IMG/VR virus record: IMGVR_UViG_3300020172_001601
Coordinates: 124,001 to 188,000 of that record
Length of the DNA: 64,000 nt
Reading direction: 5' to 3' (one strand)
Below the pieces are notes generated by a model, which did no database searches, was not told where the DNA came from, and saw only the letters and a list, made by a program, of their open reading frames with translations. Positions within the stretch are counted from its first letter, which is position 1, and every line of letters begins with the position of its first letter. The translations under genes were made by a program, and so were the position numbers. This document shows, in pieces, positions 63,535 to 63,996 of the stretch.

Positions 63535-63633
63535 AATTGGTCATCCGGCTTTACAAAGCCGGAAACCGATGGTAGAATGATTGCGGTGAAGAATAGATAA
63601 TCGCAGTAACCCACAAGAATTTTGGAGAAAGCC

Positions 63634-63996
63634 ATGACTCACTAGGTATCAACTTCGACCCGCAAGAGCCACGTTTACATCTTTGTCCGTCGTGACTTGC
63701 CGCCAGCACAAATTGTTGTGCAGGCTTCGCACGCTGCTTTTGAAGCAGCCTCTCTTCGCACCCCTGAACTCGACCACCCGCATTTCGTCTTGCTTGGATT
63801 CCGTAATCAGCAAGAACTCGAACGGGCGCTTCGTCGTGTTCAATCTTCGGGGTTCCAGGTCTGCCCATTTTTCGAGGCCGACCGTGGTGACGAACTTACC
63901 GCTTTCGCCACCCAGCCCATTTTCGAGCATCAGCGTTCGTTTTTTCGCCGGTATAACTGCCTGAGCGACGATCTGCTGTTTTCTGGCTTCACATAG
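63634..63996 (+). CDS. Pth2-like protein with an in-frame amber codon at codon 4
   Basis: GGAG SD at 63624-63627, then ATG ACT CAC TAG GTA..; conserved HVYIFVRRDL..QIVVQASHAAFE lies upstream of the only alternative start (TTG 63697); F.E.D...LTAFAT.PI..R..F. Confidence 0.8.

What the first reader, a model, noticed from the sequence alone, without database searches (positions are those of the whole stretch)
63624..63996. Pth2-like gene gated by an amber codon at position 4
Seen: promoter (63550-63578), SD GGAG (63624-63627), then ATG ACT CAC TAG. No other start exists in frame before TTG 63697, which would delete the first conserved strand (HVYIFVRRDL, equivalent to KQVIVWRHDL in the intact Pth2 at 1511). 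The full 120 aa product therefore needs UAG readthrough. Its terminal stop is also TAG, at the window edge. Without readthrough only the tripeptide MTH is made. Inference: expression reports on RF1 versus suppressor competition, producing a peptidyl-tRNA hydrolase when termination is impaired.
Basis: partly seen in the sequence, partly recalled or inferred. Interest (0 to 1): 0.88.

Follow-up and report, generated by a model that had tools for sequence, protein, structure and literature searches.

The report
Amber-gated Pth2-like gene, suppressor-tRNA module
A small phage gene for a peptidyl-tRNA-hydrolase-like protein begins with a stop codon that only the phage's own suppressor tRNA can read, and this arrangement is conserved in about 70 distant relatives, including cultured giant phages whose suppressor tRNAs had no known target genes.

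Summary
A sigma-70-type promoter (63550-63578) and GGAG (63624-63627) precede ATG ACT CAC TAG (63634-63645), which runs in frame into a 116-codon ORF.

The TAG is neither an error nor a recent mutation. In 104 related loci (75 clusters at 90% identity), 68 of the 74 clusters that could be scored carry an in-frame stop 1-7 codons after a Shine-Dalgarno-preceded ATG.

- **tRNA link:** a same-strand suppressor tRNA usually lies within 2.5 kb. The window has two tRNA(CUA) genes about 5 kb upstream.
- **Covariation:** the one lineage with an early TGA carries tRNA(UCA) genes.
- **Fold:** the product has a Pth2 fold (pLDDT 90, TM about 0.7), but the canonical Gly-Lys loop is missing.
- **Genetic code:** the window otherwise uses the standard code, with TAG ending 21 of 95 genes.
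- **Second TAG:** the "terminal" TAG at 63994 is a second read-through site. A conserved 31-codon tail runs to a TGA beyond the window edge.
- **Partner genes:** an HD-domain gene of tRNA-nucleotidyltransferase type and an uncharacterised 130-aa gene are often gated the same way.
- **Distribution:** the module occurs in cultured jumbo phages (GAP32, XacN1, ME3) and in Planctomycetota chromosomes.

Suppressor-dependent translation is well supported by comparison alone. What the protein does is inferred.

The parts
63550..63578 (+). Sigma-70-type promoter TTTACA-17-TAGAAT with a TG extension (extended -10 TGGTAGAAT)
   Evidence: The same promoter class lies at 57937-57965 in front of tRNA(CUA) number 1. 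TGGTAGAAT occurs 10 times in the window against 0.38 expected.
63624..63627 (+). Shine-Dalgarno GGAG, 6 nt upstream of the ATG
   Evidence: An SD-like motif at the same spacing precedes the ATG in nearly all homologous loci.
63634..63642 (+). Start codon and two sense codons (Met-Thr-His), the lead before the gate
   Evidence: In homologues the lead is 1-7 codons long, most often 2-3.
63643..63645 (+). Early in-frame amber codon (codon 4), the gate, followed by a purine (G)
   Evidence: Conserved in 68 of 74 clusters. The base after the stop is A in 37, G in 25, C in 3 and T in 0, against 84 purines in 146 ordinary terminal TAGs (Fisher p = 4e-9).
63646..63993 (+). Pth2-fold core, 116 codons
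   Evidence: AlphaFold pLDDT 90.1. The top 13 PDB matches are all Pth2, TM about 0.7. The family profile matches PDB Pth2 chains at 4e-5. 36 of 42 family members match Pfam PTH2 weakly.
63994..63996 (+). Second in-frame amber codon, not the true terminator. A 31-codon tail continues beyond the window to a TGA.
   Evidence: This site is TAG in L001, L105 and L006, AAG in L005, and removed by a 9-nt deletion in L002-L004. The tail motif DADPGE is kept through synonymous changes.
58011..58084 (+). Suppressor tRNA(CUA) number 1, behind the same promoter type
   Evidence: ARAGORN. Rfam tRNA model 59.2 bits. Promoter.
58708..58778 (+). Suppressor tRNA(CUA) number 2; its orthologue is kept in close relatives L002, L004 and L005
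   Evidence: Rfam tRNA model 48.7 bits.

Best explanation
The gene belongs to a large family of divergent Pth2-fold proteins, with about 1,700 cluster representatives. Their reading frames begin with SD-ATG, 1-7 sense codons and then an in-frame stop codon. They sit next to a suppressor tRNA whose anticodon matches that stop.

Translation starts at ATG 63634. At UAG 63643, either RF1 releases a tripeptide or one of the phage's two tRNA(CUA) species inserts an amino acid and the Pth2-like protein is made. A second UAG at 63994 decides whether a 31-residue tail is added. Protein output is therefore a direct read-out of suppressor activity relative to RF1. Gene and tRNA number 1 also share a promoter type.

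This gating is shown by comparative genomics but not by experiment.

The function is inferred. The Pth2 fold acts on the acyl ester at the tRNA 3' end. A frequently adjacent or fused partner is an HD phosphohydrolase of the type found in tRNA nucleotidyltransferases. The proteins therefore most likely act on tRNA 3' ends, plausibly on the suppressor tRNA itself. That would close a feedback loop that sets or limits the level of amber suppression in a genome that still uses TAG as a normal terminator. The amino acid inserted at the gate is unknown.

The confidence given is for the gating. The feedback function alone would rate about 0.3.
For: **Conservation of the gate**
- An early in-frame stop is present in 61 clusters, plus 6 HD-fusion clusters and 1 TGA cluster, out of 74 scorable clusters, down to about 30% identity.
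- It is also present in further loci L110, L112 and L114-L129.
- An SD at the correct spacing precedes the upstream ATG.
- In the HD-Pth2-like fusion proteins the stop sits at the start of the whole fused ORF.

**Link to the suppressor tRNA**
- A same-strand suppressor tRNA lies within 2.5 kb in 27 of 35 clusters that have enough flanking sequence.
- In L094/L114 both the Pth2-like gene and the HD gene carry an early TGA, and that locus carries two tRNA(UCA) genes.

**The region after the stop is translated**
- The beta1 region downstream of the stop shows 5 synonymous and 0 non-synonymous changes between L001 and L005.
- The invariant Gln of the VQxxHA motif is never TAG in any of the 104 loci.
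- The purine preference after the stop has p = 4e-9.

**The window is not recoded**
- TAG terminates 21 of 95 genes, with only short in-frame extensions.
- ORF pairs joined by a TAG in the same frame are separate genes with their own ATG.

**Fold and partners**
- Pth2 fold.
- The HD partner resembles the C-terminal HD part of a class-II tRNA nucleotidyltransferase.

**Cultured phages**
- GAP32, XacN1 and ME3 show the same arrangement.
- The XacN1 authors reported that they could not find targets for its CUA suppressor tRNAs (PMC5852040).
Against: - There is no experimental evidence of read-through or of any enzymatic activity.
- The window protein is below Pfam's PTH2 threshold.
- The canonical Gly-Lys loop is absent, so the protein may not be a hydrolase at all.
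- The TGA/UCA covariation rests on one lineage.
- Six clusters lack the early stop yet still sit next to a suppressor tRNA, so gating is frequent but not obligatory.
- In some members an ATG follows the stop within 0-4 codons (XacN1, L110, L112), so an ungated start is possible there.
- In the window the tRNAs are 5 kb away rather than adjacent.
- The direction of any feedback cannot be derived from sequence.
- Only 64 kb of the 340 kb phage genome, plus about 5.3 kb beyond the window end (L001), was examined for other TAG-containing genes.
Confidence: 0.78

Rival explanations
1. Ordinary genome-wide stop-codon reassignment (code 15). On this reading TAG is simply a sense codon, probably Gln, in this phage, and its presence at codon 4 has no special meaning.
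For: - The phage encodes two tRNA(CUA) genes.
- Some family members come from clearly TAG-rich, Lak-like genomes (L021, L033, L042).
- Public gene callers translated some homologues with TAG as Q.
- Recoded phages can have standard-code early regions (bioRxiv 10.1101/2021.08.26.457843). Only about a fifth of this genome was seen.
Against: - In the window TAG ends 21 of 95 genes, with short back-up extensions, and no other convincing internal TAG was found.
- A sense codon would interchange with CAA/CAG. The early site is TAG in about 67 clusters, while the invariant Gln is never TAG.
- The position of the stop floats relative to both the ATG and the protein core.
- The module occurs in standard-code cultured phages. 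XacN1 has only 18 amber terminators.
- It also occurs in bacterial chromosomes.
Confidence: 0.07
2. The short ORF is an independent leader (minigene). The real protein starts downstream, by re-initiation or at a non-canonical start or TTG 63697, so no read-through is needed.
For: - Mini-ORFs upstream of genes are common.
- In a minority of homologues an ATG follows the stop immediately or within 4 codons (L110, L112, XacN1).
- Database gene calls start inside beta1.
Against: - The stop is in frame with the main ORF in all 68 clusters.
- 28 of 40 scanned members have no ATG or GTG in the 12 codons after the stop.
- The codon after the stop is variable and usually not a start codon (ATT, GTT, GTA, ACT and others).
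- Starting at TTG 63697 would delete the conserved central strand beta1. That strand is well modelled and under purifying selection.
- This rival does not explain the linkage to, or the covariation with, the suppressor anticodon.
Confidence: 0.06
3. The gating is purely a timer. The gate is real, but it only delays expression until suppressor tRNA has accumulated late in infection. The protein's job is general (peptidyl-tRNA recycling, or counter-defence against toxins that attack tRNA 3' ends) and has nothing to do with the suppressor tRNA itself.
For: - Stop-codon recoding has been proposed as a timing device for late phage genes.
- Jumbo phages carry PTH2 as part of RNA repair (PMC7824862).
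- The window also encodes an RNA ligase and a canonical PTH2.
Against: - The gated genes are the immediate neighbours of the tRNA and, in the window, share its promoter class. That is odd for a delay device.
- The same three-part module sits in Planctomycetota chromosomes, where there is no infection clock.
- A canonical PTH2 already exists in the same phage, so general recycling would be redundant.
Confidence: 0.15
4. Recent nonsense mutation, pseudogene or assembly error.
For: Taken in isolation, a stop at codon 4 looks like a lesion. Annotators of cultured phages left the region uncalled or fragmented.
Against: - The same feature is present in about 70 independent clusters from many environments and assemblies.
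- There is purifying selection downstream of the stop.
Confidence: 0.01

Closest known systems
prfB (release factor 2) autoregulation through an early in-frame UGA
   Same: A translation-related gene carries an in-frame stop early in its ORF. The yield of full-length protein reports the efficiency with which that stop is decoded.
   Different: prfB bypasses the stop by a +1 frameshift, and its product is the very factor that reads the stop. Here the bypass is in-frame read-through by a co-encoded suppressor tRNA. Whether the product acts back on that tRNA is only inferred. This comparison rests on my own knowledge of prfB.
Stop-codon recoding in phages (code 15 / code 4; 'code change module' of Jade phages; bioRxiv 10.1101/2021.08.26.457843)
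   Same: A phage-encoded suppressor tRNA makes in-frame stops readable. Recoding has been proposed there as a post-transcriptional regulator.
   Different: In those phages many late, structural and lysis genes carry stops throughout their length, and the code-change genes themselves are in standard code. Here the surrounding genome uses the standard code. The stop sits at codons 2-8 of the tRNA's own neighbours, which have tRNA-end enzyme folds. The module also occurs in bacterial chromosomes. That paper does not mention a hydrolase.
Canonical PTH2 (PF01981) of archaea, eukaryotes and jumbo phages (PMC7824862)
   Same: Same alpha/beta fold (TM about 0.7 to 2zv3, 3erj, 1wn2, 1q7s). The R-x-D-L ... 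Q-x-x-H-A motif is shared, and an acidic residue sits where the D of the DAG motif lies.
   Different: The two are only about 18-20% identical. The Gly-Lys loop after DL is deleted. The window protein scores below the Pfam threshold. The same window also encodes an ungated canonical PTH2 at 1334-1912 (4e-26), so the two are unlikely to be redundant.
Orphan amber suppressor tRNAs of cultured jumbo phages (XacN1, RsoM2USA, GAP32)
   Same: Same phage groups and the same tRNA(CUA) genes. GAP32, XacN1 and ME3 all carry the gated gene.
   Different: The published work looked for C-terminal extensions after terminal amber codons and found no targets (PMC5852040). The candidates proposed here are N-terminal gates in genes that were left unannotated or were annotated in truncated form.
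Engineered amber-gated genes in genetic code expansion and biocontainment
   Same: An early UAG makes expression strictly dependent on an orthogonal suppressor tRNA. Placing the stop early avoids making truncated protein.
   Different: This is a natural system, apparently without a dedicated synthetase in the module. This comparison rests on my own knowledge.

Membership tests
PTH2 peptidyl-tRNA hydrolase (PF01981) | Sequence match above the Pfam gathering score | tested here: not met
   The window protein scores 15.2 bits against a cut-off of 23 (E = 0.026). 36 of 42 family members match at E < 0.1, best 1e-6. The fusion member L067 reaches 24.8 bits.
PTH2 peptidyl-tRNA hydrolase (PF01981) | Pth2 alpha/beta fold | tested here: met
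   The model has pLDDT 90.1 and pTM 0.84. The top 13 Foldseek PDB matches are all Pth2 structures, with probability 1.00 and TM 0.65-0.74. The family profile matches PDB Pth2 chains at 4e-5.
PTH2 peptidyl-tRNA hydrolase (PF01981) | Conserved Gly-Lys loop after the R-x-D-L strand. I recall from the literature that this lysine is catalytic. | tested here: not met
   A two-residue deletion removes the loop. The lysine aligns to Gln or a variable residue (HMM alignment; hhalign against the window's own canonical PTH2). The His of Q-x-x-H-A and an Asp/Glu at the DAG position are kept.
PTH2 peptidyl-tRNA hydrolase (PF01981) | Hydrolysis of peptidyl-tRNA | not testable with these tools
   This needs an enzyme assay or complementation of a pth(ts) strain.
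Stop-codon-recoded phage (genetic code 15) | In-frame TAG in many genes, with a clear gain in coding density when TAG is read as sense | tested here: not met
   Coding coverage of the window is 0.83 under both codes. Only the target gene has convincing internal TAGs.
Stop-codon-recoded phage (genetic code 15) | TAG not used as a terminator | tested here: not met
   21 of 95 plus-strand genes end in TAG. Their in-frame extensions are 0-19 codons, or the next gene follows with its own ATG.
Stop-codon-recoded phage (genetic code 15) | Phage-encoded suppressor tRNA | tested here: met
   Two tRNA(CUA) genes at 58011-58084 and 58708-58778.
Programmed, regulatory stop-codon read-through | Stop conserved across homologues, with purifying selection on the downstream frame | tested here: met
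   68 of 74 clusters carry the stop. The beta1 region shows 5 synonymous and 0 non-synonymous changes. The tail after the second TAG is conserved through synonymous changes.
Programmed, regulatory stop-codon read-through | A read-through-promoting context or a dedicated decoding agent | tested here: met
   A linked cognate suppressor tRNA is present. The TGA/UCA covariation is seen in L094. 62 of 65 early stops are followed by a purine, against 84 of 146 controls.
Programmed, regulatory stop-codon read-through | Full-length product demonstrated | not testable with these tools
   This needs proteomics, a reporter assay or ribosome profiling.
Pyrrolysine system (ARAGORN labels the CUA tRNAs 'tRNA-Pyl') | pylS/pylBCD genes and the atypical tRNA-Pyl architecture | tested here: inconclusive
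   Both tRNAs match the general Rfam tRNA model well (59 and 49 bits) and have ordinary cloverleaf lengths. No pyl genes appeared among the proteins scanned, but the window was not searched exhaustively for them.

The most novel reading that the evidence does not exclude
The suppressor tRNA and its amber-gated neighbours form a self-contained natural circuit. The neighbours are the Pth2-like protein plus either an HD phosphohydrolase of tRNA-nucleotidyltransferase type or the 130-aa 'RWGFHPC' protein. On this reading the gated enzymes act on the suppressor tRNA's own 3' end, by deacylation or repair. Amber suppression would then regulate itself, as a homeostat or a switch, inside genomes that otherwise keep TAG as a terminator. 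The circuit would be mobile between jumbo phages and Planctomycetota chromosomes. It would also explain the 'orphan' suppressor tRNAs of cultured jumbo phages.
Probability: 0.35. Interest if true: 0.9.

Novelty: new variant of a known kind. Interest (0 to 1): 0.82.

Why it matters
- **Orphan suppressor tRNAs.** Suppressor tRNAs are annotated in many standard-code jumbo phages, but their clients were unknown. The XacN1 authors state that they could not identify target genes (PMC5852040). This finding supplies concrete, conserved candidates, and it shows why they were missed: the stop is at the very start of the gene, so gene callers truncate or skip it.
- **A natural amber gate.** It documents a natural counterpart of the amber-gated genes used in synthetic biology. 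The gate is placed early, where failed read-through costs only a tripeptide.
- **Control of codon reassignment.** It links control of codon reassignment to enzymes with tRNA 3'-end folds. That suggests how a genome could tolerate or tune a suppressor while still using TAG as a stop. This intermediate state is central to models of how genetic codes change.
- **Testability.** Cultured phages carry the module, so the idea can be tested directly.
- **Annotation.** About 1,700 cluster representatives of this family are probably mis-called at their N-termini.

Tried and rejected
1. **Nucleotide similarity to GenBank phages** for 60000-64000: no match.
2. **Genome-wide recoding in the window.** The ORF-length and greedy coding-density comparisons between codes did not discriminate. 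A hexamer coding-potential scan was noisy on the antisense strand. The question was settled by inspecting each TAG-joined ORF pair and each TAG terminator.
3. **Gln as the inserted amino acid, from homologue P0001 (MTHQ...).** Rejected: its DNA has stops at both sites, so the Q comes from a code-15 gene call.
4. **Amino acid inferred from other internal TAG sites.** The aligned residues are inconsistent (Ser in L055, Lys in L005, Glu/Asp in relatives of L079), so no inference was possible.
5. **Isotype of the suppressor tRNAs from similarity to co-encoded tRNAs.** The nearest neighbours were inconsistent (Met, Lys, Gln, Leu, Glu).
6. **Initiation at UAG by an initiator-like tRNA(CUA).** Rejected. 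The tRNAs have a paired 1:72 base pair and lack the three G-C pairs next to the anticodon loop (read). The SD spacing fits the ATG.
7. **Family B (130 aa).** No Pfam, PHROG or PDB-profile match.
8. **'Stop-free' family members from the representative library.** The contigs were mostly too short to be useful. Two of the four turned out to have an upstream early TAG after all.
9. **More TGA-type examples.** A viral-contig scan with the L094 clade found only TAG/CUA relatives.
10. **Literature searches** for a prior description of a gated Pth2-like or HD gene next to suppressor tRNAs found none in the searchable library.
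Full report
**1. The observation**

The window reads TTTACA-17-TAGAAT (63550-63578), GGAG (63624-63627), ATG ACT CAC TAG (63634-63645). An open frame then runs from 63646 to a TAG at 63994-63996. No ATG, GTG or TTG lies in frame before TTG 63697.

The window is part of a 340 kb IMG/VR contig (IMGVR_UViG_3300020172_001601), that is, a jumbo phage. PHROG matches to an RNA ligase, AAA ATPases, a polymerase and a PRPP-synthetase-like protein agree with that. ARAGORN finds two tRNA(CUA) genes at 58011-58084 and 58708-58778. 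Both are good matches to the Rfam tRNA model, at 59 and 49 bits.

**2. Is the TAG a lesion, or an ordinary sense codon?**

Neither. I collected homologues of the 116-residue piece after the TAG, always searching the pieces apart:
- 25 database proteins.
- 66 metagenome loci.
- 28 viral loci.
- 9 loci from GTDB genomes.
- Later, 16 more viral loci.

I translated the frame upstream of the conserved VQxxHA motif in every locus. Clustered at 90% identity, the first 104 loci give 75 clusters:

| Cluster type | Number |
|---|---|
| TAG 1-7 codons after an ATG | 61 |
| Larger fusion protein with the TAG at the start of the whole ORF | 6 |
| TGA at that place | 1 |
| No early stop | 6 |
| Cut by a contig end | 1 |

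- A Shine-Dalgarno motif sits at normal spacing before the upstream ATG.
- The stop is in frame with the main ORF in all 68 clusters. If the mini-ORF were independent, the chance of that would be about 10^-32.
- The stop floats relative to both the ATG and the conserved core. It is therefore not a conserved residue written with an unusual codon.
- As an internal control, the invariant Gln of VQxxHA is never TAG in any of the 104 loci.
- The 12 codons between the TAG and the first alternative start encode strand beta1. They show 5 synonymous and 0 non-synonymous differences between the window phage and its 92% relative L005. That stretch is therefore translated, which is only possible through the TAG.
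- The base after the stop is a purine in 62 of 65 distinct sequences, against 84 of 146 terminal TAGs of long ORFs in the same loci (p = 4e-9). From memory of classical work by Bossi and by Miller, a 3' purine favours amber suppression.

The window itself is not recoded:
- Coding coverage is the same under standard and TAG-sense codes.
- The six same-frame ORF pairs joined by a TAG are separate genes. Each has its own ATG and unrelated domains, for example AlgH-like followed by an unrelated ORF, and a pilin-like N-methylation motif right after a TAG.
- Of 95 plus-strand genes, 21 end in TAG. Their in-frame extensions are only 0-19 codons, or the next gene follows immediately.

**3. Link to the suppressor tRNA**

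- In 27 of 35 clusters with at least 2.5 kb of flank on both sides, a suppressor tRNA lies within 2.5 kb, always on the same strand and often within 100-800 bases. Three more clusters, including the window's clade, have one 3-8 kb away.
- In the 16 additional loci, 15 carry a suppressor tRNA.
- The single locus whose Pth2-like gene has an early TGA (L094/L114: Met-Glu-Ser-TGA) carries two tRNA(UCA) genes. Its neighbouring HD gene also has an early TGA (Met-Thr-Trp-Ser-TGA), whereas the orthologous genes in its TAG/CUA relatives have TAG. This is one evolutionary event, but it involves two genes and two tRNAs.
- In the window, the gene and tRNA number 1 sit behind the same promoter type. Its extended -10, TGGTAGAAT, occurs 10 times in the window against 0.38 expected.

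**4. What the protein is**

- The window piece alone matches Pfam PTH2 only weakly (15.2 bits, cut-off 23).
- 36 of 42 family members match PTH2.
- The family profile finds solved Pth2 structures at 4e-5.
- An AlphaFold model (pLDDT 90.1, pTM 0.84) has Pth2 structures as its 13 best PDB neighbours, with TM about 0.7.

It is therefore a divergent member of the Pth2 fold. It lacks the Gly-Lys loop that follows the R-x-D-L strand in canonical Pth2, and the lysine aligns to Gln. I therefore do not file it as a proven peptidyl-tRNA hydrolase.

The same window encodes a canonical, ungated PTH2 at 1334-1912 (4e-26). This argues that the two proteins have different jobs.

The family is large. It has 1,710 representatives at E <= 1e-10 in the 50%-identity library. 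Many of them are called from a Met inside beta1, or as 'M..Q...' through code-15 translation. Both patterns are signs that the gate confuses gene callers.

**5. The 'terminal' TAG**

Beyond 63996 the frame continues (GKSKNISSAEGPSVVLDADPGEGAHLQEAIA) to a TGA that overlaps the next gene's ATG. The site differs among relatives:

| Locus | Codon at this site |
|---|---|
| L001, L105, L006 | TAG |
| L005 | AAG |
| L002-L004 | removed by a clean 9-base deletion |

The tail keeps EGPS..DADPGE through synonymous changes. The window-edge TAG is therefore a second read-through site, and the full product is about 152 residues. Other family members carry second TAGs elsewhere, for example before the HPH motif in five clusters.

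**6. Partners**

I scanned all loci for SD-ATG, 1-8 codons, a stop and an ORF of at least 80 codons. Outside the Pth2-like gene this finds TAG 29 times, against 7 for TAA and 7 for TGA. The TAG hits fall into recurrent families.

- **Family C (about 180 aa).** It lies next to the Pth2-like gene in about 20 loci and is fused to its N-terminus in XacN1-like phages. It nearly always has its own early stop. It carries H...HD...H...D motifs. Its profile matches the C-terminal HD part of a class-II tRNA nucleotidyltransferase (PDB 3wfo-3wfs) at 2e-5. Its model (pLDDT 94.3) has the same best structural neighbour, with TMq 0.63.
- **Family B (about 130 aa, 'RWGFHPC').** It follows the Pth2-like gene in about 34 loci. 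In the window's phage it lies just outside the window, at L001:6038-6466, and is ungated there. It is gated in the Planctomycetota-type loci. No known relatives were found.

Two of the three proteins thus have folds of enzymes that work on the tRNA 3' end.

**7. Distribution**

Cultured jumbo phages carry the module.
- **Cronobacter phage GAP32:** Met-Ala-Gln-TAG before the Pth2-like core, an annotated 'Sup-tRNA' 2.3 kb downstream, and fragmented annotation over the region.
- **Xanthomonas phage XacN1:** an HD-Pth2-like fusion with AGGA-8 nt-ATG AAG TAG.
- **Acinetobacter phage ME3:** a tRNA with anticodon CTA 450 bases upstream of Met-Thr-TAG.
- **Klebsiella phage RaK2:** no gate, and no tRNA(CUA) in the 5.3 kb stretch fetched.

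The XacN1 paper reports two CUA suppressor tRNAs and states that read-through of the 18 terminal amber codons revealed nothing, so no targets could be identified (PMC5852040).

The module (Pth2-like, family B, tRNA(CUA)) also lies in cellular contexts in Planctomycetota assemblies:
- A 1.64 Mb Gemmataceae contig, between an Nramp transporter and an ECF sigma factor and UvrD (L099).
- Next to PLD-like and ADP-ribosylglycohydrolase genes (L097).
- Among IS66, BNR-repeat and cytochrome P460 genes (L016).

**8. Mechanism**

*Shown by comparison:* translation of the Pth2-like protein requires decoding of an early stop, and a cognate suppressor tRNA is co-inherited with it.

*Follows logically:* output scales with suppressor activity relative to RF1, and failed read-through costs only a tripeptide. 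With two UAGs, the tailed form scales roughly with the square of read-through efficiency.

*Inferred:* the products act on tRNA 3' ends, plausibly on the suppressor itself. That would give feedback control of suppression in genomes that still terminate a fifth of their genes with TAG.

The direction of the feedback cannot be decided from sequence. The options are deacylation (negative), end repair (positive), or clean-up of the consequences of read-through. The inserted amino acid is also unknown.

**9. Novelty**

Regulatory use of recoded stops in phages and autoregulatory recoding (prfB) are both known kinds. I found no description of a conserved N-terminal stop gate in Pth2-like or HD genes paired with suppressor tRNAs. 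The searchable library does not cover subscription journals. I rate this a new variant of a known kind, of high interest.

Noticed in passing
window 58011-58084 and 58708-58778: The two tRNA(CUA) genes flank a 200-aa ORF (58098-58700) with a His/Gly/Cys-rich C-terminal tail. Only tRNA number 2 has an orthologue in the close relatives L002, L004 and L005.
   Followed up: partly
window 1334-1912: A canonical, ungated PTH2 gene (Pfam 4e-26) sits in the same phage as the gated Pth2-like gene.
   Followed up: partly
window 49420-49710 (also L002:559, L004:419): A second candidate early-amber ORF: AGGAAGG, 9 nt, ATG CCT ATC TAG, then 92 codons. It overlaps the end of the upstream gene, has C after the stop, and has only a few close homologues. 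Whether it is a real gene is unresolved.
   Followed up: partly
window 2070, 5869, 15075, 29406, 47064, 51411, 52599, 57957, 63570 (+ strand); 36173 (- strand): The extended -10 motif TGGTAGAAT occurs 10 times against 0.38 expected. It is probably the phage's main host-sigma-70 promoter class.
   Followed up: partly
L001:6038-6466 and about 34 other loci: Family B, a conserved 130-aa protein ('RWGFHPC...RW.RK.P.NR') with no Pfam, PHROG or PDB relatives. It lies directly downstream of the Pth2-like gene and carries its own early TAG in the Planctomycetota-type loci.
   Followed up: partly
L021:9059-9610, L089:4635-5264, L067:7455-7988 and others: Family C, an HD-domain protein (phrog_14850) resembling the HD part of class-II tRNA nucleotidyltransferases. 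It lies next to, or fused with, the Pth2-like domain and nearly always has its own early stop. PHROG also holds short fragment families (phrog_26054 of 46 aa, phrog_34073 of 77 aa) that look like gene-calling artefacts of the in-frame stops.
   Followed up: yes
L099 (1.64 Mb Gemmataceae contig), L097, L016, L098, L100, L101: Planctomycetota chromosomes carry a tRNA(CUA) gene together with two amber-gated genes in ordinary cellular neighbourhoods. This amounts to a chromosomal amber suppressor in bacteria presumed to use the standard code.
   Followed up: partly
L021:14550, L033:14727, L042:13948: An HNH endonuclease gene with TAG at codon 3 in low-GC, Lak-like contigs that also show further in-frame TAGs. 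These genomes look genuinely recoded.
   Followed up: no
L035:12291-12636 and L051:3794-4118: Phage-encoded tmRNA genes lie a few kb from the Pth2-like/suppressor module in two loci.
   Followed up: no
window 41373-42860, 59831-60586, 59183-59515, 18963-20141: A T4 Rnl1-like RNA ligase (phrog_562), an AlgH-like DUF179 protein, a small protein with a type IV pilin N-methylation motif, and a ribose-phosphate pyrophosphokinase-like gene.
   Followed up: no
L107 (GAP32 290231-291027), L130 (ME3_195), L108 (XacN1 ORF364): GenBank annotations of cultured jumbo phages truncate or fragment these genes. Starts are placed inside strand beta1 or after the TAG, and in several records no gene is called at all.
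   Followed up: yes
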